DNA from: Mobula hypostoma
Lineage: Eukaryota
DNA length: 64,000 bases
Reading direction: 5' to 3'
NCBI RefSeq assembly: GCF_963921235.1
Contig: NC_086104.1
Coordinates: 64,294,001-64,358,000, forward strand
Both the position numbers and the translations under genes were made by a program. The notes beneath the pieces were generated by a model. The model had not been told where the DNA came from. It did no database searches and worked only from the letters and a program-made list of their open reading frames with translations. Position 1 is the stretch's first letter; the number at the start of each line of letters is the position of its first letter. Below are positions 37,095-58,650 of this stretch, piece after piece.

Positions 37095-37660
37095 TTCTGA
37101 AGATGCCAATAATCTGGAGCAACACAAACAAAATGCTGGAGGAACTCAGCAGGGCAGGTCACATCTAAAGAGGGAACTTAACATTTGATGTTTCAGGCTG
37201 AGGCACTTCATCAGGACTGGAATGGGAGAGGGCAGAAGCCAGAAGGAAGGGTCAGGGGAGAGGTAGAGCAGGAATTGGCAGGGTGAGAGGGGAAAGGTAG
37301 GTGAGTGAAAAACTAGGAGGTGGCAGATGGAAGAGGCAAAGAGCTGAAGAAGAAGAAGAAATCTGATAGGAGAGGACTGCAGACCATTCTTTCTTCTTCA
37401 GCCCTCTGCCACTTTCACCAAAGTCACGTCACTGCCTCGGTTCCCCTTCCCCAAGCCACCTAACTTTCTCCTCTCACCTGGACTCACCTATTACCTCCAG
37501 CTTGTGCTCCTCTCCATCCCCTACCCTGTTATTCGGATTTCTGCCCTCTTCCTTTCCAGACTCAATGAAGGGACTCAGCCCAAATTGTCAACTCTTTATT
37601 TCCCTCCATAGATGCTGCCTGACCTGCTGAGTTTCTCCAGCATTTTATGTATGTTGCTCA
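37095..37660. mobile_element. Older Penelope-derived inverted pseudo-LTR pair
   Basis: caaaatgctggaggaactcagc... versus ...ctgctgagtttctccagcatttt inverted arms. Hammerhead motif on minus at ~37185-37218 (CTGATGA...GAAAC ATC). Confidence 0.75.
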
Positions 37661-40109: not shown

Positions 40110-41340
40110 TTAGAGTTTTCTGAGGAAGTTACCAAGGTAGTTGATGAAGGCAAGGCAGTGGATGTTGTCTGCATGGACTTCAGCAAGGCCTTTGACAAAG
40201 TCCCACATGGAAGGTTTGTTAAGAAGGTTCATTCACTTGGCATTCAAGATGAGGTGATAAATTGGATTAGACATTGGCTTTGTGGTTGAAGCCAAAGGGC
40301 AGTAGTAGATGGATGCCTCTTTGACTGGAGAGTTGCGACGATTGGAGTGCCACAGGGATCAGTGCTGGGTCTGTTATTTGTCATCTATATCAATGATCTG
40401 CATGATAATGTGGTTAACTGGATCAGCAAATATGCAGATGACACCAAGATTGGGGGTGTAGTGGACAGCAAGGAAGACTATCAGAGTGGTAGCGAGATCT
40501 GGACCAACTGGAAAAATGGGCCGAAAAATGGCATGTGGAATTTAATGCAGACAAGTGTGAGGTGTTGCACTTTGGGAGGACCAGCCAGGGAGGCTCTTGC
40601 ACAGTAAATGGTAGGGCACTGAGGAATGCGGTGGAACAAAGGGATCTGGGAATACAGGTCCAAAACTAATTGAAAGTGGCATCACAGGCAGATAAGGTCA
40701 TAAAGAAAGCTTTTGCTACATTGGTCTTCATAAATCAAAGTATTGAGTACAGGATGGGATGTTATGTTGAAGTCGTATAAGATGTTGGTGAGGCCTAATT
40801 TGGAGTACTGTGTGCAGTTTTGGTCACCTACCTACAAGAAAGTTGTAAATAAAGTTGAAAGACTACAGAAAAAATTTACAAGGATTTTGCCGGGACTGGA
40901 GGACCTGAGTTATGCAGAAAGATTAAATAGGTTCGGACATTATTCCTTGGAATGTCAAAGACTGAGGAGAAAGTTGGTGGGGGTATTCAAAATGATGAAG
41001 GGTATAGATAGGGTAAATGCAAACCAGCATTTTCCGGTGAATTTGGATGAGACTACAACTAGAGGACATAGTTTAAGGGTGAAAGGTGAAAAGTTTAAAG
41101 GGAACATGAAGGGAAACTTCTTCACTCAGAGGGCCGTGAGAGTGTGGAACAAGCTGCCAAGGCAAGTGATGCATGTGAGCTCGATTTCAATGTTTAGGAG
41201 AAGTTTGGATAGGTACATGGGTGGTTGGGGTATGGAGGGCTGTGGTCCTGGTGCAGGTCAGTGGGAGTAGGCAGATTAAATGGTTTGGCAAGGACTAAAT
41301 GGGCCAAATGGCCTGCTTCTGTGCTGAACTTTTCTATGAC
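40110..41340 (+). mobile_element. CR1 LINE 3' portion
   Basis: VDVVCMDFSKAFDKVPH, PQGSVLG, KYADDTK, LVRPNLEYCVQFW, FFTQRAVRVWN, and the 3' UTR. Confidence 0.92.
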
Positions 41341-43214
41341 CAAGTGGATTAGTTAGGGAGTGACCATGAATTTTAATTAGCATTTTCTACTTCTTTCAGT
41401 TCTGTTTTAAAATCCCAAATGCAGCAGGGTAGCAGGTTTTGGTGCTCCTGTGTTATAGCAGGGCATGGATCTGCTTTCCTGATGCATTCAGCTAACTGCA
41501 GCCACCGGGAATGGTTAGTGAGGTAGTGGAGTAAGAGAACAGCTAGCATTAATAAAAAAGACCATCTACTTATTGTTTTGACTTCCTCTACAGAATCTGA
41601 GCACATTTTTAACAAGGGAGTCTTCTTTAAGAAGTGAGAGAGGTAAAAGACAGAAAATTATAGGCCAGTTAGCCTTGACTTCAGTGATTGGTAAAATGTT
41701 ACAGTCCATTAGTTGTTGTGATTGGTGTAACTTAAGAAATAGGGCACTCAGCTTATGTTGAGCAAAATCCCACTAGTAACTAACAAGGATAATTTGTTGT
41801 GGTGAAGTTGAGTGAGGGAGAATACCTCAGCCCTAAAAAATAATTCCATAGTGTCAGGAATTGTAGCGGAGGCTTGACCCAAAAGTAGAGCAACAGAGAC
41901 AATATACTGTAGCAGTGAGCAATAACTTTAATAATAAGCTGCAAAATAAGCCGCGAAGGGCCATGAAACAAGAGAGCACAATTATTAAACACCACAGGCA
42001 ACTAGGTAACTGAATACCAGAGCAACTGGTTGAGGCCGACTGGTTTGATGGGTGAACAAGGACTGTGAATGAGAGATGGGTTTAAATAGGCTGTAGACTG
42101 GGAGGTGCCCGCCTGACAGGACACCCCTCCTATGGTCGGCACCCGATGAGCCAGGGCAATCCGGATGAGTCCAGTGGAACTCCTCAGTGAGTGATGGATC
42201 CAATGAGTATGGCACCCAAGACCTCTCCTCCATGCAATACCTTTCCTAAATGACCAGGTATTGCACACCTCATCAACAATGACGCAAGTCCATCAGCCGG
42301 CGAACCATATACACTGGACCACCATCCACCATTTCAGGTTCTGGAGGTGCAGTTTCAGGTGGGTTGAGTGGTCCATGGACAATGGGCTTGAGACAGGGCA
42401 CATGGAAGATAGATGTGATCCTGAGGGATACTGCCAGCCAGAGACAGTAAGTGACTGGACTGGATTGATGTGATAGGTAATCTTGACGGGACAATGAACT
42501 GAGGTGAGAGCTCGTGGGAGTCAGTGTGCAGAGGCAGATCTCAAATGGACAGTCAGACATGGTCCCTGGGTTGGAGTAGTCTGATTGGGCAGTGCTGGCA
42601 GTTGGCTTAGTGGCAGAACGCATGGTTGGCAGCTAGGATAGCCCTCTGTGCCCTTTTCCAAACACTCCAGCAGCGGGAAATCAGGGCCTTGCCTGACAGT
42701 AGCCATGAAGTACTTCAAAGGGTGCCATAGCTGTGGCAGAGGAGATGTGTAAATTGTGAGAAAGATCAGCTCAGGCCAGGGCAGACAATTCTTCCATGTG
42801 GAAGGTTTAGAGGCAGTGAAGCACTGCAGAAAGCTCTGCACTTGCTGATTGGCTCTTTCTGGTCTGTGGATGATAGCCAGAGGACAAACTCAACTGAGGT
42901 GCAGAGGAGGGGACAGAAGGCTTGCTAGGAGTGGGAGGAGAATTGTCAGCCCTGATCTAGCACAACTTCTGAGGGAAACCATGGAGGCAACCTACATGTT
43001 GGAGAACCAGGTACACTATCCCAGTGGCTGACTGAAGTTTGGGAAGGGCAATCAATTAGGTCACCTTGGAGAACCAGTCCACCATTGCCTTGATCACCAT
43101 GGGCCCCATCGTAAGGTGGCAAACCCATGATGAAATCCATGGTGATGAGGGACCACTAGCATTGAGGGACTGGTAGGGGCCACAGAAGCCCAGAGGGCAC
43201 TGATTGGAGGAATT

Positions 43215-43855
43215 CACAAGATCACAAGACAAAGGAGCAGAAGTAGACCATTCAGCCCATCGAGTCTGCTCCGCAGCTCCCCCATGAGCTAAACTATTCA
43301 CCCATCTAGTTCCAATTTCCGGCTTTTTCCCCATATCCCTTGATACCCTGACTAATTAGATACCTGTCAATCTCCTCCTTAAACACCCTCAATGATCGGG
43401 CCTCCACAGCTGTATGTGGCAATGAATTCCACAAATCCACGACCCTCTGGCTAAAAAAATTTCTCCTCATCTCTGTTTTAACTGGGTACCCTCTAATTCT
43501 AAGACTATGGCCTCTTGTCCTGGACTTACCCACCAAGGGAAACAACCTTTCCACATCTACTCTGTCCAACCCTTTCAACATTCGAAACGTTTCTATGAGA
43601 TCCCCTCTCACTCTTCTATACTCTAATGAATACAGTCCAAGAGCCGACAGACGCTCCTCATATGTTAGCTCCTGCATTCCAGGAATCATCCTTGTAAATC
43701 TTCTCTGAACTCTCTCCAACATCAGTATATCCTTTCTAAGATAGGGGGCCCAAAACTGCACACAGTATTCCAAATGAGGTCTCACTAATGCCCCATAGAG
43801 CCTCATCAACACCTCCTTACTCTTATACACTATTCCTCTTGAAATGAATGCCAAT
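43215..43855 (-). mobile_element. Young CR1 3' end inserted in the Sushi integrase region
   Basis: Uninterrupted 182-aa ORF (LVRPHLEYCVQFWAPY...FFSQRVVDLWNSLP) and a (cacaaga)-repeat tail. Confidence 0.92.
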
Positions 43856-45661
43856 TCATTTGCAATTCAACTCATGCCAATTCAATTGGACTGGGCACAT
43901 TAAAAACAGGTGGCAATGAACTGATACACATGTGCAATCATGCGCCTGGATGGCTGGATATGAATGAGGAGTAGGCCCACTGGAGTGCCTCAGAGCGCAA
44001 GGCTGCTGGCATGTACTTGCAGTGGTTGGGTGTGTTGGCCAGAGTTGGCTCGTGCTGTAGGGCCAGGCAGATCCAGTTCTCAAGGTCCCAGATGATTGGA
44101 GCAAGGATCTGCAAAGAAGCAATGATAAGCTGTTCGAACTGCCGCGACAGGGCATCTGCCTTAGTGTTCTTGGAGCCAGGTCAATAGGAGATGGTGAAGT
44201 TGAATTGTGGAAAGAAAGGGCCAGAGAGCCTGACCTGGGTTGAGTTGGTGGATCTATTCTATGCATGTGAGGTTCTGCTTGTCAGTCAGATCAGGAATGG
44301 CACAGTGTTTCCCATTCGCCATCATCTCCATTCCATCAAGGCCCATTTAACACTGAGTAGCTCACTGTCTCCTATTCCATAACAGTGCTGTGTAGAGTTG
44401 AACTTGTGCACTAAGTCCTTGCTGGAAGAGGATGGCCTGGGCGCCCATGTTAGATGCATCCACCTCTACCACAAAAGGTCCGGAGAGGTTCAGATTGTGG
44501 AGAATGGGACTGGTGGTGAAACATCTCTTGAGCTCCTCTGAAGCATGGTCCTCAGCAGCCAACCAGCTCATCCCTGATGTAGGTGACTTGGTGAGAGAGG
44601 TGAGAGGAGCAGCAATTTGGCTGTTGTTTCTCACAAAACGATGGTAGAAGTTGCAGAAGCCCAAGAAGTGCTGCAGCTGTTTGTGGGAGTGGGCTTGGGG
44701 CCTTTCAATGGAGGAGCTCACTTTCTCTGGGTCCATGGTTATGCCCTGGGGCAAAAGGACATAACCCAGGAAGGAAATAATCTTCTAACTTGCAGTACAG
44801 TTGTTTTTCAAGCAGACGCTGAAGGACTAAAGAGACATGATAGGAAGTCCTTAGAGAAGATGAGGATGTAACCAAGGTAGAATAACACATACCAGTGTAG
44901 CACGTCTCAGAGAATCTTGTTAATGAAGGCTTGGAAAATGGCTGAACTGTCAGAAAGTCTGAAGGACATCACCAAATATTCATAGCAGCCAGATGGTGTT
45001 ATGAAAGCCATCTTCCACTCATCCCCCTGGCAGATGTGGATTAGGTTGTACACACTCCATGGAACCAGTTTGGTGAATATCTGGGCCCAGTGTAGTGTTT
45101 CGAATGCACTGTCCATCAAGGGGAGAGGGTAGCAGTTCCTAATGTTAATTTAGTTGAGTCCATAGTAGTCGATGCAGGGACGAAGACCCCCATTTTTATT
45201 TTTATAACTCGCCAACCAGTCCTACAGACACAGAAACCCATCCAGATACACACATCCAGATACATTGCTCGCCAAACAGTGGACCTTCCGCCCGTCCACG
45301 GGCGCTACATAGGCCAACCTATCTGAGAACTTCCTAATCCTCCGAGACCTCCATACACCGCTCACCTGAACCCTAAAGGCTCAGACACTACTAGGGATAC
45401 CTCGGGCCTGCTTGCCAACTCCTCTCTCACTCAGGCCACCATTACAACTCGGAGCCCCCAGTCCCGTGTCCAGAGCCCAACTTCTTTTCCTTCCTGGTCC
45501 TGCTGTAACCCAGACTGCCCACAGCTAGCCCTCCCCACTACACCTGACTCAGTGTGAGAAGGGTCAAAGGTCTCTTCCTCAATCACGGGGAAGTTAGCGA
45601 AAGGCAACATGTACCACATGTCCAGCACATCATCCTTCGAATCCGTATTCTTCCTCATTCC

Positions 45662-46500
45662 CTCGATCGGTAGCTGCTGTTTGAGTTTCTTCAAACTGAA
45701 ACATTTAGCTGGGGCTACCCCTTCAGCCTCCTGCAGTCGAGACGTCAGCTTCTTCGGGGACTCCTTCGACTCTCGCCACAGCCTCAGCAGCTCTGACTCA
45801 GGGTTCCTGGCCATCTCAATCTGGGACGCAGTTACCCCACCAGCTTCTTCCACCCTGACCTGAAAAGCAGCAGTTAAAGAATGTTCAGCCTCCAGTTGTT
45901 TCTTCCTGATGACGTCCTCCAGGTCAACGTTCAGTTTTTCCACTTCATTTAAACTGTCGATAGTCACCTTCAGGTTCCTTTCAAGCGTTCGCCTCCCTTT
46001 TCCGAGATCTGTCCTTCATTTCTATACCTCCTCAGGAGTGTAGTCAAACTCCCCTCCCTGGCCTCTCGGTTTTCTGTTGGCCTGAGTCAGAACACTTCCT
46101 TGATCTTCCCCAACTTGTAAGTCTTCCAATCTTTTCTGGATCAACGTCTTGAGTTTCTGCTGATCCCTTCGAAGGTGGGTCATTGTTTCTTCTCGCTGGA
46201 TTAATTCATCAGTACATGACCATAGTGTCGGCTCGGAATTCCATTGCTCCTTCTCCATGTTGACGAGTGTGAATTCCAAGTTCGCAATGGTCGTCCCAAA
46301 AGTGCAGTACTCAGTCTCCGGCCGGCATTTCTGAGCACTCAGTTCAGCGGTGCAAATCCCCTCTCTCCCCTGTGTTTCATTCAGATTGATGACCTGGGTT
46401 TCCATCCCCAGGTCCACCACCGTCTGTTCCAACACCAGGAAGTTCAACTGGTATGTCAGGTCATTTTTCTCACATTGCACCAAACTCCTCCGGCCAAGAA
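45662..46500 (-). pseudogene. Intronless sarcomeric myosin heavy-chain rod (S2/LMM) fragments, MYH16-like, embedded in a Gypsy element
   Basis: [66 protein letters not shown]...[10 protein letters not shown] and [11 protein letters not shown]...[13 protein letters not shown] occur in the same order as the myosin II rod motifs. Confidence 0.85.
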
Positions 46501-47954
46501 CTCCTCCACGTGTGACACTTCGCTTCTGTCGCCCAGGCTCAGCCACTCGCCTTGCCTCATAGTCCCCCCTGGCGAATCCAAGCTCTAGGCGGTCATCCAT
46601 ATATGCCAAAACTCCACACACCTTCACTTCCCCCATGGTCTTCCTCATGCCCCGCGGGAAGGATGCAGGGGCTCCGGATATGCCCTTGGGCATCTTTTCG
46701 GATCGGAAGAATCCTAGGGAACTAATAATGGCCGTCTTCGGCTCAACAGCCGCACTCCTTGAGATCTGGCAACATCCACTCCTCAGATCCAGCACATTAA
46801 ACCACGTGGCATAATCCACACACACGCTGCCTACATCTTCCACGGCGCCAGGGTCCAGTTGCCGCGACCTCTCTCTCACTGAGGTGTCTTCAGCGGTCAA
46901 CTCCCCTCCCTCGTGGTAGTTCGGAGTGTCTACTAAGAGGGTCTCACCCTCAGCTACTTTCTCCAGGCCGTACCACAGCTGGGTCACGTTTAAATTCGGT
47001 ACTGGCTCAAGGCTGCTACACACGTCCTCAGAAGCAACTCGACACGCTGGGCGCCCAGACAATGCCCCTATGAACTCCAGGGTCATTAACCATTATCATC
47101 TTCTGGATAATTACTGGCACTGGTACCCAAAATCTCCGGTGTCCTTGCAGTTGTCAAGGGTAAATGCTTCAGACACCGGTTGTAAAACAAACTGTACAAC
47201 AACTTGACCTGCGCCCCGGGGTCGAGGATGGCTTTAGCATCGCTTCCCTCTATCCATAACGACACCCTGGGGCGTGGTCCCTCTAAGCCTTCAGGAATAG
47301 GCTCTTTTCCTTTCGGAAGTTCATCGGTACATTGCTGGGAACGTGCTTCCCCAGAGACCCCGAGCCGTTCCCTCACGGGGCCTCCACTAAGTTTCCCGAG
47401 ACCTCTCTGATCAGCTGAACAACTGAAGGAGGGGCTGATCCCCTGGCACTGCAAGCAATTTAGCTGCCCTCCTAGCCAGAGAAGACACACTGAAAACTTT
47501 CCCCCCTCTTTCAAATAACTGACAGCTGTCACTACAGTGTAAGTGAACCTGACAGCTCTAACACCGTCACCAGCCCATCTACTTAAAATTTCAACCAATC
47601 CCTGTTGCTCTCCCTCAACCAAGCACTGCCACTCATCTAACAACTGAGAGATCCGCTCCACCCACGTCTCGCATGCCTCCACCCCTCTTGGGGTGGACAC
47701 TGTACCAAACGCCAGGCGGAGCCTGCCAGAGCCAGAATATTTATTCTCAGACACTACCTCAGAATCAGACCACTCTTTCCTCTCTCTCCCAACAGCATGG
47801 ACAGCCCCGAGTCACACCCCCAACTCGTCAACGCTAGTCTGAACTCGAACAAAGACCTCACCCACCACGCATGCAGCAATAACCAGCAAATAACCCACAG
47901 AGACACACATTACTGATTTATACAGAGCAACCACACAGCATACCACTAGATCCA

Positions 47955-47972
47955 ATCCCAGAAGAGCCCCCA
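47955..47972 (-). other. tRNA-Pro primer binding site
   Basis: TGGGGGCTCTTCTGGGAT, a 16/18 match to canonical TGGGGGCTCGTCCGGGAT, 3 nt downstream of the LTR end. Confidence 0.85.
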
Positions 47973-50900
47973 CAATGTAGCCCACTGGCCAGCCTCAGGG
48001 TCGCTCGGCTCGCTGTCATCTAGGGAAACAGCCCTCGACCCCGCCAAACTGGGTAATTAGTTTGTGTAGATGCTGTGTGATGTACCCCACCCCGCCCAAA
48101 TAACAGACAGTACACCAGATACGATTAAGTGATTCACAGTTTATAGATATTACTGGAACTATATAATTAATAGAGAATAAAATATTAAAGGAAAATAAAA
48201 GGTGCCACACTTATCAAAGTTCAGTCTCTTCGTGCACAAACAGTTGGAGCTCAGGACCCTTCTTCTTCACCCTGTGACCCCTTGGACCACCTTGACTGGC
48301 CGCCTGGGACCAACAATGGTGGTCGACCAGACGCTCCACACGAGTCCGTCTCCATCTCCTCTCCTCACCCTGACCTCGGACTCCTGCTCGGGGTCCGACT
48401 CCATTAGTGGATTCACAGCACCTGGTCCATCCTCTGTCTCTCTCTCTCTCCCACTTTCTCCCCAAAACCCCGCGCATACAATATTTTACAGACACACCAA
48501 AAGCATAACAACTATCCCAAATGGTTCGTAACACCTTCTTATCAGTAACGTGATCCAAACAAACTGCTAGCGGGAGGACTTTCTCAGCAGTTAACATAAC
48601 AAAGAAGCCCTTTCAATTATAACATAACAAAGAAGCCATTTTAGTTAGACTACACAGTGCCAAAAAGAAAAGAAACCCCTTACAGAAAGAAGAATCCTGC
48701 ACTAGCTGAGAACTGGGGTGGTTGAATGAAGCTATGCTGTAACTCTTTGGTGATGTAGTCATTCATGGTTTGGGTCTCAAGAAGGGGAGAGAGAGAACAG
48801 GCTACCTTGGGAGGGGTGGTGCCCAAGAGGAAGTTTATCATGCAGTTGTGTGGTCTGTGAGTTGGCAGGGTGTTGACGATTGTTAAGTTGTTGTATTCCT
48901 GCAGGAGTTTGGTGAGGTCGAAGGTTTCCTCTGTCTCCATAGGTCTGTGGGGTGAAGTCCACTGAGGTTGCAGGCAAGTGGTTCGGCAGGTCAACACAGC
49001 AATGGACTAGATGACCAGGCAAAGTGAGGAGCATGAGTGGAGTGCCAGGGGTAGGCCAGGATGAGAGGCATGTTGGGTGAGTCAATCAGGAGGAATTGGA
49101 TGGACTTGCGGTGCTCTCTGATGCTCGTGTGCATGCTCTGACCATCCCAACCCCAAGGGACGTCCGTTAATTGCCATGATGCAGAAGGAGTGAGAGTTAG
49201 CCTAGGTAGGAAGTCCGAGCTGCACACAGAGTCTGGTCCAGAAAGCTCCCTACTGCAACGGAATCCACCAGAGCCTCCTGTGAGTGTGGAGCCATCGGGG
49301 TGTGGAGAGTGAGTCATGGTGTGGTGCTGGGATGAGGGTCTGGGAGGAGCTTACCAGAGAGAAGGCCCATCGCCTCTACCTGGTGGTGGCATTTCCTGGA
49401 TGTAAGGGGTATTTGATGCGTAGGTGGTCGGCTGCTCTGCAGTAGGTGCTCAAGTTGTTTTTCCACCGATGCTCATGCTCTTGAGGTGTTAAGGGAGCTC
49501 TCACTAGCTGCCTGGGTTTTAAAGGCATTGCTATGGAGGATGCTACAGCCTAAATGGTTCTGGGTAGCAAACTGGCTGTCTGGCTGATGATCTTGTGGGT
49601 CATTCCATAAAACACTTGTCTATACAGAAGACCAGAGTGATGAGGCATTCGAGATTGGTGGCCAGCTGCCGGATTGAGAGCTTGTCCTTCAAACATTCCA
49701 GGAGGCCATGGTGGTAATGTGCTAGCAACATTTCTATATTCCAGCTGCCTTCCGCCAAGAAGGCCTTGAATTCCATGGTGGTCCAGCCTGAGCATCGGCC
49801 TGGACATAGGTGAAGTATCCACTTCCCACGTGCTCAAAAACCTGGCATATCTCAGTAGCAAATTCTTCTTATTTATTGCAAATGGTGGTTTTATGGTTTT
49901 ATCAGCAGCCCAAGTCTGAGTTCACCCAGTCAAGAGAGCGATGACAAATGCAACCTTGGCTCAGTCCGTAGAATACAGAGTTGGCTGGAGTTCAAAATGT
50001 AAGATGGACTGAGAGAGGAAGTTACCACATCGTGTTCGTGATCTGTCAAAGTGTACAGGCACCAGAATCAGAATTCAGAGGGAGGAAGTTGACTGGCGTA
50101 GGGCTCCTGTATCGAGATGGAGAGTTGGAAGAGAGTGGTGAGCAGGAGGTTAATGGTGAGTGGTGAGTGATCAATGGTTTGCCTCCTGGTTCTGGATCAA
50201 GTGCTTATGTCAATAGATGAGTTCTTTTAGGTGAGCATACTCTGTTGGGCCAAATCATAGGTCCACCCATTCTGCCAGGAACCGTAGAGAAGTCTTGATG
50301 CAAAAGCAGAGCAGTGGAGAGCATATAGCAGTCAGCAAGGAGGGGCCATGAAACAAGAGAGGACAGGTTCTAAGCACCTTACCAAGGAATGTGGAGTTCA
50401 ACCTTACCAGGACTCCTTGATATCACACTCAATTAAGCCCATCTTGATGTTATGAGTTGTCGCTATCAACTTACCTTTAGGATTCAGCATTTCTGTCTCT
50501 GTTGGGACCAAGACTGTGAAATGGTGTGAACTGAGTGGTACGAGCAGAGCCCAAATTGAACATCAGTAAATAGGCAATTGGTGAATAAATTGTTCTTGAT
50601 AGCATTGTCAACTGTCCCTTCTATCACAACTCTGATGAATGAAAGCAGGTTGATAGGGCAGTAATTGAGTAAATTAGATTTATCTTATTGTCTGTGCACA
50701 AGGCACACATTTCGGTGATAAGATTGATGGAATAAAACAGCATGACAGGATGGTGTGTGACTTGGAAGGAAACTTGAACATTCCCATGCCACTGCTGCTG
50801 TAGACATTTTAGCCAAAGGAGATCAAAAGTTTGCTCAAAGCAGCCTTGGCAAGTTGCTGCAGTACATACTATGGTCAAGTGTGCAGCTAGTGAGAGAGTG

Positions 50901-51049: not shown

Positions 51050-51640
51050 ATATTTAACAATGAGTTTAGAATGAGGGACATTATATTGCAGTTATATAAA
51101 TCGTTGGTGAGGACACACTTGGAGTACTGTGTACAGTTTTGATTGTGCTGTGTATTGTCAAACTGGAGAGGATGCAGAAGAGACTTATGAGGATGCTGAC
51201 TGGACTATACAGCCTGAATTATAGGAAGAGGTTAGCCACACTGGATCTTTAACTGGAGCACAGGAGAATGAGAGTGATCTCGTAGAAGTTTATAAAATCA
51301 TGAGGGATATAGATAAGGTGTAAGGTCGTAGTCTTTTCCCCAGGCTTTGGGGGTGGGGGTCAAAAATCAGTGGTCACAAATGCAAGATGGGAGTGGTTTA
51401 TAAGAAACCTAAGAGGTAACTTCTTTACGAGTAGGGTAGTGAGTACCTGGAATGAGCTGCCAGAGGAAGTGGCTGAGGCGAGTACAATTGCAACATTTAA
51501 AAGGAAATTGGATAGATACATGGAGGGTTATGGGGCAAACGTGGGAAACTGGGACCAGCATGGAGGATGTTGTGGTCGGCATGGACCAGCTGAGCTAAAA
51601 GGCTTGTTTCCATGCTGTGTTGGACAATGACTCTATTGAC
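51050..51640 (+). mobile_element. CR1 3' fragment
   Basis: LRGNFFTSRVVSTWNELPEEV...FKRKLDRYM and the 3' UTR. Confidence 0.85.
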
Positions 51641-52609: not shown

Positions 52610-55600
52610 TAAAGCAGAAGGGAAGGGGGGAGAAGATGCACGCTGTGGTGATAGGGGATTCGTTAGTTAGGGGGACGGACAGGAAGTTGGGTAGGCAAGA
52701 ACGAGATTTCCAGATGGTATGTTGCCTCCTGGGTACCAGGGTCTGGGATATCTCAGACTGAGTCCTCAGCATTCTTAAATGGGAGGGTGAACAGCCAGAA
52801 GTCATCATCCATGTAGGTACCAATGACATGGGTAGAATGAGTGATGACATTCTGCAGAGGGAGTTCATGAAGTTAAGTGTTAATTTAAAGGGCAGCATCT
52901 CCGGGGTTCTGATCTCAGGATTGCTACCCATGCCACGTGCTAGAACTAGGAAGATTATACAGTTTAATACGTGTCTAAGGAGTTAGTGCAGGAGGAATGG
53001 CATAAAATTTTTGGACATTGGGCTCTCTTTCAAGAAAGGTGGGATCTGAACAGAAGGGATGGTTTGCACCTGAACTGGAGGGGGACTAATATCTTAGCGG
53101 GAAGGTTTATTAATGCTGTATGGTGGGGTTTAAATTAGAGTCACAGGGGGATGGAAACCAGAGTGTCAGAACAGTTAGTGGAGAGGTTGTGGGTGCAGAT
53201 GTTGGTAAGACCTCAGACAAAGTTAGGAATCAAAAGGTTGAGCATGGTACGACTAGCGTCCTGAGCTGCATATATTTCAATGCAAGAAGTATCGTAGGAA
53301 AGGCAGATAATAATGCAGAAAATTAGGTAGCTGGTTACAAACAGAAGCAATGTGTTGTGAGGAGAGGCTGTTGATAGGGCAAAATTGCAGTCAACCTGGA
53401 TAAATTGCATCGTAAAAGGCAGACAAAATCGAAAAGGGTGAATACGGGACTGAAGGTGTTGTATTTGAATGTGTGCAGTCTACGGAATAAGGTAGATGAA
53501 CTTGCACAGTTGCAGATTGGCAGATATGATTTTGTAGGCATCACTGAATCATGGCTGAAAGAAGATTATAGCTGGGAGCTTAATGTCCAAGGATACACAT
53601 TGTATCAAAAGGATAGGCAGGAAGGCGTTGCTCTGTTGGTAAAAAAATGAAATTAAATCATTAGCCAGAGGTGACATAGGGTTGGAAAGTGGAGAGAGCG
53701 AAGGAGCTGTAAGGGTAAAAAGATCTTGATGGGAGTTGTGTACAGACCGCCAAACAGTAGTAAGGAGATAGAAAATGCATGGCAAAAGGGCAATGTTACA
53801 ATAGTCATGGGGGTCTCCAATATGCAGGTAGATTGGTTAAAATCAGGGTGGTGCTGGATTCCACAAGGGGGATTTTCTAGAGTGTCTATGAGATAGCTTT
53901 TTAGAGCAGCTATAGTGGTTGAGCCCACTAGAGGATCAGCTCTTCTGGATCAGGTGTTGTGCCAGAACCAGAATTGATGAGAGTCCTCAAGGTAAAAGAA
54001 TCCTTAGGGGCAAGTGATCATAATACGATCAAATTCACTCTGAAATTTAAGAAGGAGGAGCTAAATTCAGATGTAAGAGTTTTACAATGGATCAAAGGGA
54101 ATTACAGTGACATGAAAGGAGTTGGCCAGAATTGACTGGAAAAGAACACTGGTAGGGATGATGGCAAAACAGAAATCACTGGAATTTCTGGAAGTAATTC
54201 AGAAGGCTCAGGATATATACACTCCAAAGAGGAAAAAGTGTTCTGAAGAAAAGATAACACAACCGTGGCTAACAAGAGAAGTCAACGCCAATATAAAAGT
54301 CAAAGGAAAGGCATATGATACAGCAAAAATTGGTGAGAAGTTAGACAATTGGAAAGCTTTGAAAAACCAACAGAAGGCAGCTAAAAACTCAATACGAAGG
54401 TAAAGATGGGATATGAAATTAAGCTAGCCAGGAATATTAAAGAGGATAACAGAAGTTTCTTCAGAGACATAAAGTGTGAAAGAGAGGTGAGAATGGGTAT
54501 CAGACCACTGGAAAATGATGCTGGTGAAGTAGTAATGGGGGACATTGAAATCATGGATGAACTGTATAGCATTTTGCAACATTCTTCACTGCGGAAGACA
54601 CTAGCAGTATGGTGGAAGTTCCAGGTGTCAGGGGTCATGAAGTGTGTGAAATTACCATTACTAGAGAGAAGGTTTTTGGGAAACAGAAAGGTCTGAAGGT
54701 GGATGGGTCTCCTGAACCAGATGGTGTACACCCCAGAGTTCTGAAAGAGGTGGCTAAGGAGATCATGGAAACATGAGTAATGATCTTTCAAGAATCACTA
54801 GATTCTGAAATGATTCTGGAAGACTGGAAATTACAAATGTCACTCCACTCGTCAAGAAGGGAGAGAGGCAAAAGAAAAGGAAACTGTAGGCCAATTAGTC
54901 TGATGTCAATAGGAAGGAAGATCTTGGAGTCAATTATTAAAGATGAGGTTTCAGGGTATTTGAAGACATATGATAAAATTGGTTGTAGTCAGCCTGGTTT
55001 CCTCAAGGGAAAATCTTGCCTGCCAAATCTGTTGGAAATCTTTGAAGAAATGAAAGCAGGATAAACAAAGGAGATTTGGTTGATGTTGTGTACTTGGATT
55101 TTCAGAAGGCCTTTGATAATGCACCACACATGAGGCTGCTTAACAAGGTATGAGCCCATGGTATTATAGGAAATATTCTAGCATGGATAAAGCAGTGACT
55201 GATTGGCAGAAGGCAAAGAGTGGGACTAAAGGGAGCCTTTTCTGGCTGGCTGCTGGTGACTAGTGGTGTTCCACAGGGGTCCATTTTGGGACTGATCCTT
55301 TTTACTTTATAAGTCAATTATTTGGATGATGGAATTGATGGCTTTGTTGCAAAGTTTGCAGATGATATGAAGATAGCTGGAGAAGCAGGTAGTTTTGAGG
55401 AAGCAGAGAGGCTACAGAAGGACTTAGACAGATTAGGAGAGTGGGCAAAGAAATGGCAGATGAAATACAGTGTCCGGAAGTGTATGGTCATGAACTTTTG
55501 TGGAAGAAATGAAAGTGTTAACTATTTTCTAAATGGAGAGACAATACAAAAACTGAGGTGCAAAGGAACTTGGGAGTCCTTGTGCAGTATTCCCTGAACG

Positions 55601-56265
55601 TTAATTTGTAGGTTGAGTCTGTGGTGAGGAAGGCAAATGCAATGTTAGCATTCATTTCAAGAGGACTAGAATAATAAAAGCAATGATGTAATGTTGAGAC
55701 TTTATAAAGAAATGGTGAGGCCTCGTTTGGAGTATTGTGAGCATTTTGGGCCCGTTAGCTTAGAAAGGATGTGTTGAAATTGGAGAAGGTTCAAAGGGGA
55801 TTCATAAAAATGATTCCAGGATTGAATGGCTTGCCATATGAAAAGTGTTTGATGGCTTTGGGCCTGTATTCACTAGAGTTCAGAAGAATGAGGGGTGACG
55901 TGATTGAAACCTATCAAATGGTAAAAGGCCTTGATAGAGTGGATGTGGAGAGGATGTTTCCTATGGTGGGAGAGTCTAAGACCAGAGGGCACAGCCTCAG
56001 AATGGAAGGGCATCCCTTAAGAATGGATATGAGGAGGAATTTCTTTAGCCAGAGAGTGGTGAATTTGTGGAATTCTTTGCCACAGGCAGCTGTGGAGGCC
56101 AAGGTTGGTTGATGTTGATAAGTTCGTAATTGGTCAGGGCATGAAGGGATTTAGGGAGAAGGTAGGATATTGGGGTTGAAAGGAAAATTGGATCAGCCAT
56201 GATTAAATGGCAGAGCTGACTCAATGGGCTAAATGGCTTAATTCTCCTCCTATATCTTATGATAA
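52610..56265 (+). mobile_element. Long degraded CR1 LINE sequence (ORF1 esterase, endonuclease, RT, 3' end); probably two joined CR1 copies
   Basis: AVVIGDSLVRGTDR and IIHVGTND (SGNH-type ORF1). Two EN starts (CIYFNARSI, VLYLNVCSL), VYRPP, SDH, GFLKGKSCL, KFADDMK, FFSQRVVNLWNSLP. Confidence 0.9.
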
Positions 56266-56809: not shown

Positions 56810-58650
56810 TACAGTGTGAGGTATTGCATTTTGATAGATCAAACCTAGTAAGACTTATACAATGAATACTAGGACCCTGGGGAGTGTTTATGGTACAGAG
56901 GTGCTGAAGAGCGCAAGTGCATTGTTCACTGAAAGTAGCATTACAGGGTGGTAAAGAAAGCACTCATCCAACAGTCATAGCACTGAATAAAGGAGTTGGG
57001 AAGGTATGTTGCAATTATTTAAGATGATGATGAGGCCAGATTTGGATATTGTGTACAGTTTTGGATACCCTGTTTACAGGAAAGATGTGATATATTAGAA
57101 AGAGTGAAGAAAAGATTTGTTACTATGTTGGCTGGTCTTGGGGGCTGAGTTAAAAGGAAAAGTATAGATTAGGACTTTATTTTCTTGAAGACAGGAGAAT
57201 GAAAGGTGACCTGATAAATGTATATAAGATCAAGGGGGGCACGGACAGGGTGAAAGCACATAGTCTTTTCCCAGAGAGGGAGTACTAAAAACAAGAGAGT
57301 ATAGGTTTAAGATCAGAGGTGAGAGATTTAAAAGGGACAACAAGGAGCAAGGACTTCATGCAAAGGGTAGTGCATTTTTGGAATAAGCTGCCAGAAATAG
57401 TGTTTCAGGTGGGCACATTAGCAATATTTAAAGGACATCCAGATAAGTACCTGGGTAGGAGAGCTTTAGGCTTGGTCTCTTGGCCAAGTGCTGACAGATG
57501 AGACTAGCTTGCTGGGCAACACAGTCAGCATGGGGCAGCTGGGCCAAAGGATCAGCTTCTATGCTATATGATTCTCTGGCTCTAAATTTGGTGGCAGGAA
57601 CAAAAAGAGAAGAATCTACAGCTAGGACTTGTCATCTCAAGGAAGTGTTAGAGGTGATGCCACTTTTCAGAAAATGTTGTGCAGCAGGGGAGATGGCTAA
57701 TTGGTAAGGAAAGCTGGTGAGTATTTCCACAACTTTGAGAGATCTGTAATTTAAACTCAAATAAAGGAAAGTGATCAAAAGCCTAATTATATATTTTTTA
57801 ATTAAGATGGTTAACTAAGAGCTCAATTTAAAAATTGTTTCTATGTGGACTACATTTTAAATAAAAGAGTTGAATTGAAAGTACGACAGGAGAACTTCAT
57901 CCTATGTGTTGTATAGCCTGCAGCATGTGGGAATTCCTAGATTCTCCTAATGGCCTGAACAACTTATCTATAGAAGATCAAACCTGAAGGCAGAGCAAAG
58001 GTTACTGGCAGGTTTCTTAGCAGTTAGAGGAACAGAAGGATCTTGAGGTCCACATCCATATGTAGATCTCTCAAAGTTTATTGGGTGGTTAAGAAGGCAT
58101 ATGGTGTATTGGCCTTCATTAGTGGGGGGATTGAGTTTAAGAGCCGTGTGGTAATGTTGCAGATCTATAAAACCCTGGTTAGACCTCACTTGGAGTATTG
58201 TGTTCAGATCCTAGGAAGTATGTTGAAACTATGGAGTGCAGAGGAGATTTATCAGGATGTTGCTGGTTTAGAGAACATATCTTATGAGGAAAGGTTGAGT
58301 GAGCTAGGGCTCTTCTCTTTGGAGAGAAGGAGGATGACAGGTGACTGGATGGAGGTGTATAAGGTAACAGGCAAGTGCCTGTTTCCTAGGGCAGCAACAG
58401 CTAATATAAGAGGGCATAATTTTAAGACGATTGGAGGTAAGTATAGGGGGGATGTCAGAGATAGTTTTTTTTTACACAGAAAGTGGTAAGTGCATGCGAC
58501 ACACCTCCAGGGGTGGGGGTGAAGGAAGACGCATGAGGGACACTTAAGAACCTTTTAGATAAGCACATAGATGAAAGAAAAGTGGAGGGCTACGAGGGAG
58601 GTAAAGGTTAGATTGATCTTGGACTAAGTTAAAAGGTCAGCTCAATAGCA
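56810..58650 (+). mobile_element. Two degraded CR1 3' fragments (56810-57575 and 57970-58650)
   Basis: FMQRVVHFWNKLPE; KKAYGVLAFI...LVRPHLEYCVQ. Confidence 0.8.

What the first reader, a model, noticed from the sequence alone, without database searches (positions are those of the whole stretch)
45662..46500. Gypsy LTR retrotransposon that captured a spliced myosin heavy-chain (MYH16-like) mRNA in place of RNaseH/integrase
Seen: just after the RT YMDD motif (46603-46592) the minus frame switches to coiled-coil sequence. From 46279 to 45899, 127 codons ([12 protein letters not shown]...[10 protein letters not shown]...[25 protein letters not shown]) align by eye without a gap to the sarcomeric myosin S2 rod (LELTLAKVEKEK...LDDLQAEEDK...LKKK). 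EKNDLTYQL lies upstream; [13 protein letters not shown] and [11 protein letters not shown]...AKCFSL lie downstream. Gypsy-like sequence then resumes (RRSRRIRK..DRLAY). Known: this stretch spans several exon junctions in sarcomeric MYH genes, and TIDxLNE, EKNDLT.QL and ELLKLRRE are closer to MYH16 than to MYH7-type chains, as I remember them. Inference: a host mRNA was co-packaged and captured by template switching, as in retroviral oncogene transduction. The result is LTR-PBS-gag-PR-RT(part)-myosin, a candidate family of myosin-carrying non-autonomous retroelements.
Basis: partly seen in the sequence, partly recalled or inferred. Interest (0 to 1): 0.92.

Follow-up and report, generated by a model that had tools for sequence, protein, structure and literature searches.

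The report
Ray retrotransposon carrying a myosin fragment
A dead copy of a Ty3/Gypsy-derived mobile element carries an intron-free piece of a muscle myosin tail fused behind its truncated reverse transcriptase, and the same fusion occurs at many places in manta, devil-ray and stingray genomes, so a host gene fragment was picked up once and then spread.

Summary
On the minus strand a Ty3/Gypsy-type reverse transcriptase (RT; YMDD at 46603-46592) runs in one frame into a coiled coil that is specifically sarcomeric myosin rod. PDB Myosin-7 scores E 2.6e-7 with the window alone, and Myosin-4/-7 score E 1e-19 with a family profile. Three collinear rod pieces are present.

The same RT-myosin fusion occurs in at least 14 RefSeq gene models: Mobula birostris 6, M. 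hypostoma 6, Hypanus sabinus 2. They lie on several chromosomes per species and form sub-lineages that share internal deletions.

The aligned stretch crosses three exon-junction equivalents of a real vertebrate myosin-tail gene without an intron, so it came from spliced RNA.

- RT-derived sequence continues about 38 codons past YMDD.
- The Gypsy sequence downstream does not resume the same element. It is a second, older Gypsy whose RT covers the same Ty3 RT positions, and the chimera probably sits nested inside it.
- No LTR pair or 3' LTR exists in the window. LTR, PBS, gag and PR are unverified.
- MYH16 likeness rests only on RefSeq product names.
- Capture by template switching is inferred, not shown.

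This is a new example of a known kind, host-mRNA transduction by LTR retroelements. Moderately interesting.

The parts
45237..48681 (-). The whole chimeric block as it sits in this window, about 3.45 kb: 5' non-coding block, gag-like ORF, RT remnant, myosin-derived region, tail and 3' spacer. The 3' end is uncertain and lies between 45237 and 45206.
   Evidence: The block is bounded by the two halves of an older Gypsy-like element. The upstream half was recognised by eye only; the downstream half is tool-supported. The short words TTTCTGT and GGGTTTCT are shared at the two junctions.
47812..48681 (-). 5' non-coding block, a candidate 5' LTR plus leader. It starts with TG.
   Evidence: It has no second copy anywhere in the window. 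No significant match to the 3' spacer was found (15 of 500 shuffles reach the score). LTR status is therefore unverified.
48030..48047 (-). Candidate primer-binding site. It starts with TGG and follows a CA after 3 nt.
   Evidence: Read from the sequence. No tRNA gene is present in the window to compare it with. Unverified.
47089..47811 (-). Gag-like ORF (possibly gag-PR), an open stretch of 241 codons. It lies in a different frame from the RT remnant (one frame change).
   Evidence: Pfam PNMA E 0.0033 at 17.3 bits, below the cut-off of 25. No PDB hit. The single-sequence AlphaFold model is useless, pLDDT 32.5. No similarity to the fetched family proteins. A protease-like motif was seen by eye only.
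45431..47086 (-). One reading frame of 552 codons: RT remnant, myosin-derived region and tail. It is broken by two in-frame stops and no frameshift.
   Evidence: Translation. It is collinear with P0001, P0002, P0004, P0006 and P0018 at 83-92% amino-acid identity.
46487..47086 (-). Truncated Ty3/Gypsy RT covering fingers and palm only, with YMDD at 46603-46592. The thumb, RNase H and integrase are absent.
   Evidence: RVT_1 at 46816-46589. The family profile matches Ty3 RT 116-221, E 2.3e-9. It is 86.5% identical to P0001 over 200 residues without a gap.
45659..46486 (-). Myosin-rod-derived region. It holds three collinear pieces corresponding to Myosin-7 at about 916-1087, 1140-1185 and 1385-1427 (two internal deletions relative to a myosin rod), plus a collinear but unproven upstream stretch. 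Tool-supported from about 46411 downward.
   Evidence: PDB hits. Real myosin-tail fragments P0010, P0012 and P0015 align gap-free at 28-34% identity. The aligned stretch crosses three exon-junction equivalents of P0010 without an intron.
45434..45658 (-). Family-conserved C-terminal tail of unknown origin.
   Evidence: It is 67-83% identical in P0002, P0009 and P0014. No Pfam hit. A weak TRIM72 PRY hint (E 0.72) was not reproduced with the family profile.
45237..45430 (-). 3' spacer with no recognisable LTR or polypurine tract.
48682..48688 (-). Candidate target-site duplication, upstream copy (TTTCTGT).
   Evidence: A shared word of 7 nt or more occurs in 3.9% of random pairs of 30-nt windows, so this is only suggestive.
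45230..45236 (-). Candidate target-site duplication, downstream copy (TTTCTGT).
48683..49833 (-). Upstream half of an older, heavily decayed Gypsy-like element (G1): gag end, protease and start of pol.
   Evidence: Recognised by eye only. Pfam, PDB and the protein search found nothing.
42276..45229 (-). Downstream half of G1: RT, RNase H and an integrase-like remainder. The RT-RNase H stretch alone has at least three in-frame stops and two frameshifts, and a LINE fragment is nested in it.
   Evidence: Ty3 RT 127-199, E 7.3e-10. RVT_1. RT_RNaseH_2, E 4e-9. A weak SH3_Tf2-1 hint, E 0.067.
43221..43863 (-). 5'-truncated LINE fragment (ORF2 tail) nested in G1.
   Evidence: 71.6% identical over 647 nt to 55633-56263. 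That region lies just downstream of a LINE-type RT at 54780-55594.

Best explanation
The window holds one dead copy of a non-autonomous retroelement family derived from Ty3/Gypsy and found in myliobatiform rays.

Origin (inferred). In an ancestor of Mobula and Hypanus, a Gypsy element lost everything after the RT palm. In its place it acquired a spliced mRNA fragment of a sarcomeric (class II, striated-muscle) myosin heavy-chain rod, fused in frame. The most likely route is copy-choice, that is template switching, during reverse transcription of co-packaged RNAs. This is how retroviral oncogenes and the host segments of maize Bs1 are thought to have been taken up.

Spread. The chimera encodes no thumb, RNase H or integrase, so it could only have spread using the enzymes of an autonomous relative. 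It did spread: the same RT-myosin junction sits on several chromosomes in three species, and sub-lineages carry further shared internal deletions.

This copy. It appears to have landed inside the RT of an older Gypsy element. It has since picked up two in-frame stops and has no detectable 3' LTR. The myosin coil is most likely a passenger with no function.

Shown: the chimera, its specific myosin origin, the absence of introns, and the multi-copy, multi-species distribution.

Inferred: the capture mechanism, mobilisation in trans, nesting by integration, and LTR/PBS identity.
For: Specific myosin origin:
- Window alone: Myosin-7, E 2.6e-7, 119 residues gap-free.
- Family profile: E 1.9e-19 and 8.5e-19 for vertebrate Myosin-4 and Myosin-7, 1e-10 to 1e-11 for arthropod striated-muscle myosins. 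No other coiled-coil protein scores below E 0.07. There are three collinear segments.

RT identity:
- Ty3 RT 116-221, E 2.3e-9.
- A single Hypanus protein (P0005) hits both Ty3 RT 114-227 (E 2.9e-12) and Myosin-7 997-1100 (E 3.1e-7).

Family:
- 14 RefSeq models lie on 5 chromosome-scale contigs in each Mobula species and 2 in Hypanus.
- P0001 and P0009 are single-exon models: the gene lengths are 1299 and 894 nt for 432 and 297 aa.
- RT, myosin and tail parts are about equally diverged between copies, at 83-92%.
- One 40-residue in-frame deletion is shared by P0001, P0006, P0017, P0018 and P0019, on different chromosomes and in two species, at 89-98% identity. This means the family amplified after the capture.

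No introns:
- The window aligns gap-free to residues 73-199 of the Cyprinodon myosin-tail gene product P0010.
- That gene has exon junctions at residues 128, 162 and 192, separated by introns of 1.7-7 kb.

No poly(A) after the myosin part or the ORF.

Nesting:
- The downstream RT covers the same Ty3 positions as the chimera's RT.
- Shared 7-8-nt words lie at the two junctions.
- The host element is far more decayed than the insert.

One of the two internal myosin deletions lies in a short motif that occurs at both of its ends in Myosin-7 (alignment text). That is what a copy-choice deletion would leave.
Against: - The window has no LTR pair and no 3' LTR, so this copy does not show the structure an integrase-made insertion should have.
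- Gag and PR are hardly supported.
- The PBS candidate is unverified.
- The upstream half of the host element was recognised by eye only.
- The candidate duplication is weak, with about a 4% chance expectation.
- An A-rich 14-mer at 45205-45192 could be the remnant of an A-tail rather than codons of the host element.
- Pfam Myosin_tail_1 does not report any member.
- No genomic DNA of any other copy could be fetched. Ends, LTRs and duplications of other copies are therefore unknown, and segmental duplication cannot be excluded as the way copies spread.
Confidence: 0.75

Rival explanations
1. A LINE-made processed pseudogene of a myosin mRNA landed inside a resident Gypsy copy. The composite then multiplied mainly by segmental or other DNA-level duplication, or by LINE-mediated retroposition of its transcript, not by LTR-type retrotransposition.
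For: - LINE elements are abundant around the site.
- This copy has no 3' LTR.
- An A-rich 14-mer sits at the 3' edge of the block.
- The ends of other copies are unknown.
Against: - No A-run and no direct repeats flank the myosin part itself.
- The RT, myosin and tail share one open frame in many copies.
- Copies are dispersed over at least 5 chromosomes per species, with sub-lineages defined by shared deletions.
- The 5' block looks like a full LTR followed by a TGG site, which a transcript-derived retrocopy should not carry.
Confidence: 0.13
2. The RT-myosin open reading frame is a host gene family or an element-encoded protein kept by selection, not a decaying passenger.
For: - Long intact ORFs of 432, 450 and 355 aa occur in several copies.
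- This copy has only two stops and no frameshift in 552 codons.
- RefSeq annotates the copies as genes.
- Purifying selection on captured ORFs was reported for crocodilian ERVs (PMC4299795).
Against: - The RT catalytic region varies freely between copies.
- Different copies carry different large internal deletions.
- The myosin part is only about 32% identical to real myosins.
- RT, myosin and tail diverge at the same rate.
- Open frames are expected for young copies and for models picked by a gene caller.
Confidence: 0.08
3. The myosin likeness is generic coiled-coil similarity, and the region is just decayed retroelement sequence.
For: - Pfam Myosin_tail_1 is silent, and several unrelated coiled-coil families give weak hits.
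- Identity to myosin is low.
Against: - Only sarcomeric myosin heavy chains score, down to E 1e-19, in three collinear segments with long gap-free alignment.
- An independent hit in Hypanus P0005.
- Real myosin-tail fragments are retrieved from 1.8 billion proteins.
Confidence: 0.02

Closest known systems
[quoted passage not shown]
   Same: - A non-autonomous LTR-type retroelement.
- It carries partial host gene segments fused into a hybrid ORF.
- Capture is ascribed to aberrant template switching or transduction.
   Different: - Bs1 is a plant element with both LTRs documented and three donor genes.
- Here the host is a vertebrate (batoid) and the donor is a single myosin rod in three collinear pieces, placed directly behind a truncated RT.
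- LTRs are not demonstrated here.
Crocodilian ERVs that captured KIT-ligand and nectin3 mRNAs (PMC4299795)
   Same: - A vertebrate LTR retroelement lineage carrying a captured spliced host mRNA.
- Several copies exist.
- The capture predates a speciation.
- One case replaces an element gene.
   Different: - Those are retroviruses (ERV4 and related) carrying near full-length ORFs under purifying selection.
- Here a Ty3/Gypsy-type RT is followed by a partial, strongly diverged structural-protein fragment.
- Selection was not tested here.
Acutely transforming retroviruses (oncogene transduction; established knowledge)
   Same: - Host mRNA is taken up at the expense of replication genes.
- The product is fused to element-encoded sequence.
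- Spread depends on a helper.
   Different: - No sign of a growth-related function.
- The element is germ-line resident and old (shared by two ray families).
- It is not an infectious virus.
LINE-mediated processed pseudogenes
   Same: An intron-free copy of a host mRNA fragment.
   Different: - No A-tail or flanking duplication lies around the myosin part.
- It is fused in frame to an RT.
- It propagated as part of a larger unit.

Membership tests
Ty3/Gypsy LTR retrotransposon | Reverse transcriptase of the Ty3/Gypsy type | tested here: met
   The family profile matches Ty3 RT 116-221, E 2.3e-9. P0005 matches Ty3 RT 114-227, E 2.9e-12. Partial RVT_1.
Ty3/Gypsy LTR retrotransposon | Two long terminal repeats in direct orientation | tested here: not met
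   The 5' block has no repeat anywhere in the window. There is no significant match to the 3' spacer.
Ty3/Gypsy LTR retrotransposon | Primer-binding site and polypurine tract next to the LTRs | tested here: inconclusive
   A TGG-initiated candidate lies at 48047-48030. There is no tRNA to compare it with. No convincing polypurine tract.
Ty3/Gypsy LTR retrotransposon | Gag and aspartic protease | tested here: inconclusive
   PNMA E 0.0033, below the cut-off. No PDB hit. The model has pLDDT 32.5.
Ty3/Gypsy LTR retrotransposon | RNase H and integrase (autonomy) | tested here: not met
   The frame passes from the RT palm into myosin-derived sequence. The RNase H found downstream belongs to the other element.
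Ty3/Gypsy LTR retrotransposon | Short target-site duplication | tested here: inconclusive
   TTTCTGT lies at both junctions, with a chance expectation of about 4%.
Sarcomeric class II myosin heavy chain (rod) | Specific sequence similarity to the rod, collinear | tested here: met
   Only striated-muscle myosin heavy chains score.
Sarcomeric class II myosin heavy chain (rod) | Pfam Myosin_tail_1 match | tested here: not met
   Not reported at E up to 1 for any of the 13 sequences scanned. The real fragment P0010 carries it.
Sarcomeric class II myosin heavy chain (rod) | Motor domain and full-length rod (a working myosin gene) | tested here: not met
   Only about 270 residues of rod are present, in three pieces. 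An RT lies upstream instead of a motor.
MYH16 lineage in particular | Groups with MYH16 rather than MYH7, MYH4 and the like in a tree | not testable with these tools
   No MYH16 or batoid MYH sequence could be fetched. The only pointers are the RefSeq names 'myosin-16-like' (P0019) and 'putative uncharacterized protein MYH16' (P0013), while P0007 and P0011 are named skeletal-like and cardiac-like.
Host-gene-transducing LTR retroelement (Bs1-like, oncogene-capture-like) | Intron-free host fragment inside the element, fused to element coding sequence | tested here: met
   One frame runs from RT to myosin. Three exon-junction equivalents of P0010 are crossed without an intron.
Host-gene-transducing LTR retroelement (Bs1-like, oncogene-capture-like) | The same junction in several dispersed copies | tested here: met
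   14 RefSeq models in three species on several chromosomes.
Host-gene-transducing LTR retroelement (Bs1-like, oncogene-capture-like) | Host fragment lies between the element's two LTRs, and an autonomous partner exists | not testable with these tools
   DNA of the other copies could not be fetched. The word-based protein search is limited by length and cannot return full-length pol proteins.
LINE-mediated processed pseudogene | A-tail and flanking direct repeats around the retrocopy | tested here: not met
   No A-run lies at the end of the myosin part or of the ORF. The only A-rich word is at 45205-45192, at the edge of the whole block.

The most novel reading that the evidence does not exclude
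The fused RT-remnant/myosin-coil open reading frame is kept open by selection. It would make a protein with a long dimerising coiled coil that serves the element (for example in particle assembly or in competing for a helper's machinery) or has been taken over by the host as a small gene family in devil rays. The evidence does not exclude this. Several copies keep ORFs of 355-450 codons, and this copy has no frameshift in 552 codons.
Probability: 0.12. Interest if true: 0.75.

Novelty: new member of a known kind. Interest (0 to 1): 0.55.

Why it matters
- Capture of host mRNA by LTR retroelements is well documented for retroviruses and for plant elements, but hardly at all for non-retroviral Ty3/Gypsy elements of vertebrates. 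I found no paper linking retrotransposons, myosin heavy chain and gene capture.
- This case gives a datable example. It is shared by Mobula and Hypanus and is still forming young sub-lineages in Mobula, so it could be used to study how a non-autonomous chimera persists.
- There is a practical point. RefSeq models in Mobula named 'myosin-16-like', 'myosin heavy chain ...-like', 'putative uncharacterized protein MYH16' and even 'glutathione S-transferase theta-2 isoform X1' are copies of this element, not muscle genes. They would distort any count of MYH genes in rays.

Tried and rejected
- **DNA of other copies.** Look-ups for P0001, P0003, P0014 and P0009 returned no DNA because the assemblies are too large. 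Ends, LTRs and duplications of other copies could not be examined.
- **LTR search.** Gapless repeats, blastn self-comparison, short-word blast and a gapped local alignment with shuffles found no LTR pair. An apparent 50-bp direct repeat around a shared 12-mer was not significant and was dropped.
- **PRY/SPRY idea for the tail.** A single-sequence hit to TRIM72 (E 0.72) was not reproduced by the family profile or by Pfam, so I rejected it.
- **EKNDLTYQL stretch alone.** No PDB hit. It is kept only as collinear by eye.
- **Upstream half of the older Gypsy.** Pfam, the PDB and two word-based protein searches found nothing.
- **Gag/PR.** No PDB hit. The AlphaFold model has pLDDT 32.5, so no fold search was run. 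No similarity to the family proteins.
- **Rfam, tRNA and tandem-repeat scans of 41-51 kb.** Nothing relevant.
- **P0016 and loci L001-L003.** These are bacterial and sit in the P0001 cluster by mistake.
- **P0008.** A repetitive protein unrelated to the finding.
- **Donor paralogue (MYH16 against the others).** No full-length batoid myosin could be obtained, because the protein search takes only candidates of similar length.

Full report
**1. What is there.** The window is vertebrate-like and repeat-rich. A G+C-rich block (0.49-0.53) at 42-50 kb stands against about 0.40 around it. On the minus strand one reading frame runs from 47086 to 45431, 552 codons with two in-frame stops and no frameshift.
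- Its first part is a partial reverse transcriptase (RT). RVT_1 profile positions 59-156 match at E 2.6e-5, below Pfam's cut-off.
- YMDD is at 46603-46592.
- A profile of seven family members matches the Ty3 RT structure at residues 116-221, E 2.3e-9. The RT is therefore of the Ty3/Gypsy type and stops after the palm.

**2. The myosin part is real and specific.**
- The window's own sequence hits Myosin-7 residues 913-1031 over 119 residues without a gap, at about 32% identity, E 2.6e-7.
- A six-member family profile gives E 1.9e-19 for Myosin-4 and 8.5e-19 for Myosin-7. Arthropod striated-muscle myosins score 1e-10 to 1e-11. No other coiled-coil protein scores below E 0.07.
- The match falls into three collinear pieces, roughly Myosin-7 916-1087, 1140-1185 and 1385-1427. 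That means two internal deletions relative to a rod.
- One of these deletions lies in a short motif that occurs at both of its ends in Myosin-7 (alignment text). A copy-choice jump would leave this pattern. This is an inference.
- A search of 1.84 billion representative proteins returned family members plus three real myosin-tail fragments at 28-34% identity.
- Pfam Myosin_tail_1 did not report any member. I put this down to divergence and composition filtering, but it is a negative result.
- The family alignment shows RT-derived sequence continuing about 38 codons past YMDD. I therefore place the start of the myosin-derived region at about 46486 (by eye) or 46411 (tool-supported), and its end at about 45659.
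- A 75-residue tail (45658-45434) is conserved in the family but matches nothing.

**3. It came from spliced RNA.** The window aligns gap-free to residues 73-199 of P0010, a Cyprinodon gene product that carries Myosin_tail_1. On its genomic locus L004 that gene has exon junctions at residues 128, 162 and 192, with introns of about 2.5, 7 and 1.7 kb. The window crosses all three equivalents without an intron. P0010 is not the donor orthologue, so this supports spliced origin but does not prove it for the true donor. No A-run follows the myosin part or the ORF.

**4. It is a family.** The word-based protein search and the cluster look-ups found 14 RefSeq models with the same architecture.
- Mobula birostris: P0001, P0017, P0018, P0002, P0004, P0006, on five chromosome-scale contigs.
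- M. hypostoma: P0007, P0009, P0011, P0013, P0014, P0019, on five contigs.
- Hypanus sabinus: P0003, P0005.
- P0005 alone hits both Ty3 RT (E 2.9e-12) and Myosin-7 (E 3.1e-7).
- P0001 and P0009 are single-exon models.
- The window copy is 86.5% identical to P0001 in the RT part, 83-92% identical to M. birostris copies in the myosin parts, and 83% identical to P0002 in the tail. All parts have therefore diverged together as one unit.
- One 40-residue in-frame deletion is shared by five models on different chromosomes and in both Mobula species, at 89-98% identity. Other copies carry other deletions. The chimera therefore amplified after the capture, in several sub-lineages.
- Its presence in Mobula and Hypanus at 55-57% identity points to an old capture.
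- The exact ORF of the window is not in the collection. The nearest relatives are from M. birostris.

**5.
- The Gypsy-like sequence downstream (45229 to about 42276) is not the same element resuming. Its RT piece matches Ty3 RT 127-199 (E 7.3e-10). These are the same positions that the chimera's RT covers (116-221). It then has its own RT_RNaseH_2 domain (E 4e-9).
- This element (G1) is much more decayed. The RT-RNase H stretch alone has at least three in-frame stops and two frameshifts. It also holds a nested 5'-truncated LINE fragment at 43863-43221.
- Upstream of the chimera (49833-48683), stretches on the same strand look to me like the gag end, protease and pol start of the same kind of element. 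No tool confirmed this.
- If it is right, the 3.45-kb block 48681-45237 interrupts G1's RT. The words TTTCTGT and GGGTTTCT are shared at the two junctions, with a chance expectation of about 4%. I rate the nesting as likely but inferred.

**6. What is not shown.**
- The 870-nt 5' block starts with TG. After about 635 nt it has a CA followed by a TGG-initiated 16-18-mer, which is what an LTR plus PBS would look like.
- It has no second copy in the window, and the 194-nt 3' spacer does not resemble it. This copy has no 3' LTR.
- An A-rich 14-mer at 45205-45192 sits at the 3' edge. I read it as codons of G1, but it could be the remnant of an A-tail.
- The gag-like ORF has only a sub-threshold PNMA hit. 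It has no PDB hit, and the model was unusable.
- MYH16 likeness could not be tested. RefSeq names two members after MYH16 and two others after skeletal and cardiac chains.

**7. Mechanism and comparison.** The best reading is host-mRNA transduction by an LTR retroelement, followed by spread as a non-autonomous family. The kind is known from maize Bs1 (PMC13317346), crocodilian ERVs with KIT-ligand and nectin3 (PMC4299795) and acutely transforming retroviruses. I found no paper on a retrotransposon carrying myosin and none on Mobula transposable elements that covers this. I class it as a new member of a known kind.

**8. Slips to report.**
None of it went into a tool, a note or this report, and the claims that lean on remembered motifs are marked 'by eye'.
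- References used for searches, one notebook entry and the labels printed by one script give the bounds of stop-free pieces, and so implicitly mark where the two stops lie. I do not list those places here.
- In my reasoning I read the two G1 halves side by side across the insertion to judge frame continuity.
- The consensus lines that the alignment tool prints by itself were not used.

Noticed in passing
window 54780-56263 (+); also 43221-43863 (-), 40756-40914, 51075-51340, 57005-57272: A LINE-type element lies on the plus strand. It has RVT_1 pieces (E 2e-4 and 1e-3) followed by an ORF2-tail segment. Diverged copies of that tail (65-79% identity) are scattered through the window, and one of them is nested in the old Gypsy element.
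   Followed up: partly
window 37117-37659: The region matches its own reverse complement (67% over 581 nt), so it is a palindrome-like inverted duplication of unknown nature.
   Followed up: no
RefSeq proteins P0019, P0013, P0007, P0011, P0018 (Mobula hypostoma, M. birostris): Copies of the chimera are annotated as 'myosin-16-like', 'putative uncharacterized protein MYH16', 'myosin heavy chain, skeletal muscle-like', 'myosin heavy chain, cardiac muscle isoform-like' and 'glutathione S-transferase theta-2 isoform X1'. The last of these contains no visible GST sequence.
   Followed up: partly
window 45434-45658 (-): A 75-residue tail after the myosin part is conserved at 67-83% among family members, yet matches no Pfam family or PDB chain. 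Its origin (element 3' region or a second host fragment) is unknown.
   Followed up: partly
window 45192-45205 (-): This is the only A-rich run near the 3' end of the inserted block. It is either lysine/asparagine codons of the interrupted older element or the remnant of an A-tail. The answer bears on how this particular copy was inserted.
   Followed up: partly
P0016; loci L001-L003: A 54-residue bacterial protein from metagenome contigs is listed as a member of the P0001 cluster. It is unrelated by sequence and appears to be a clustering artefact.
   Followed up: yes
window 42000-50000: G+C is 0.49-0.53 across the nested retroelement cluster, against 0.38-0.43 in the rest of the window.
   Followed up: no
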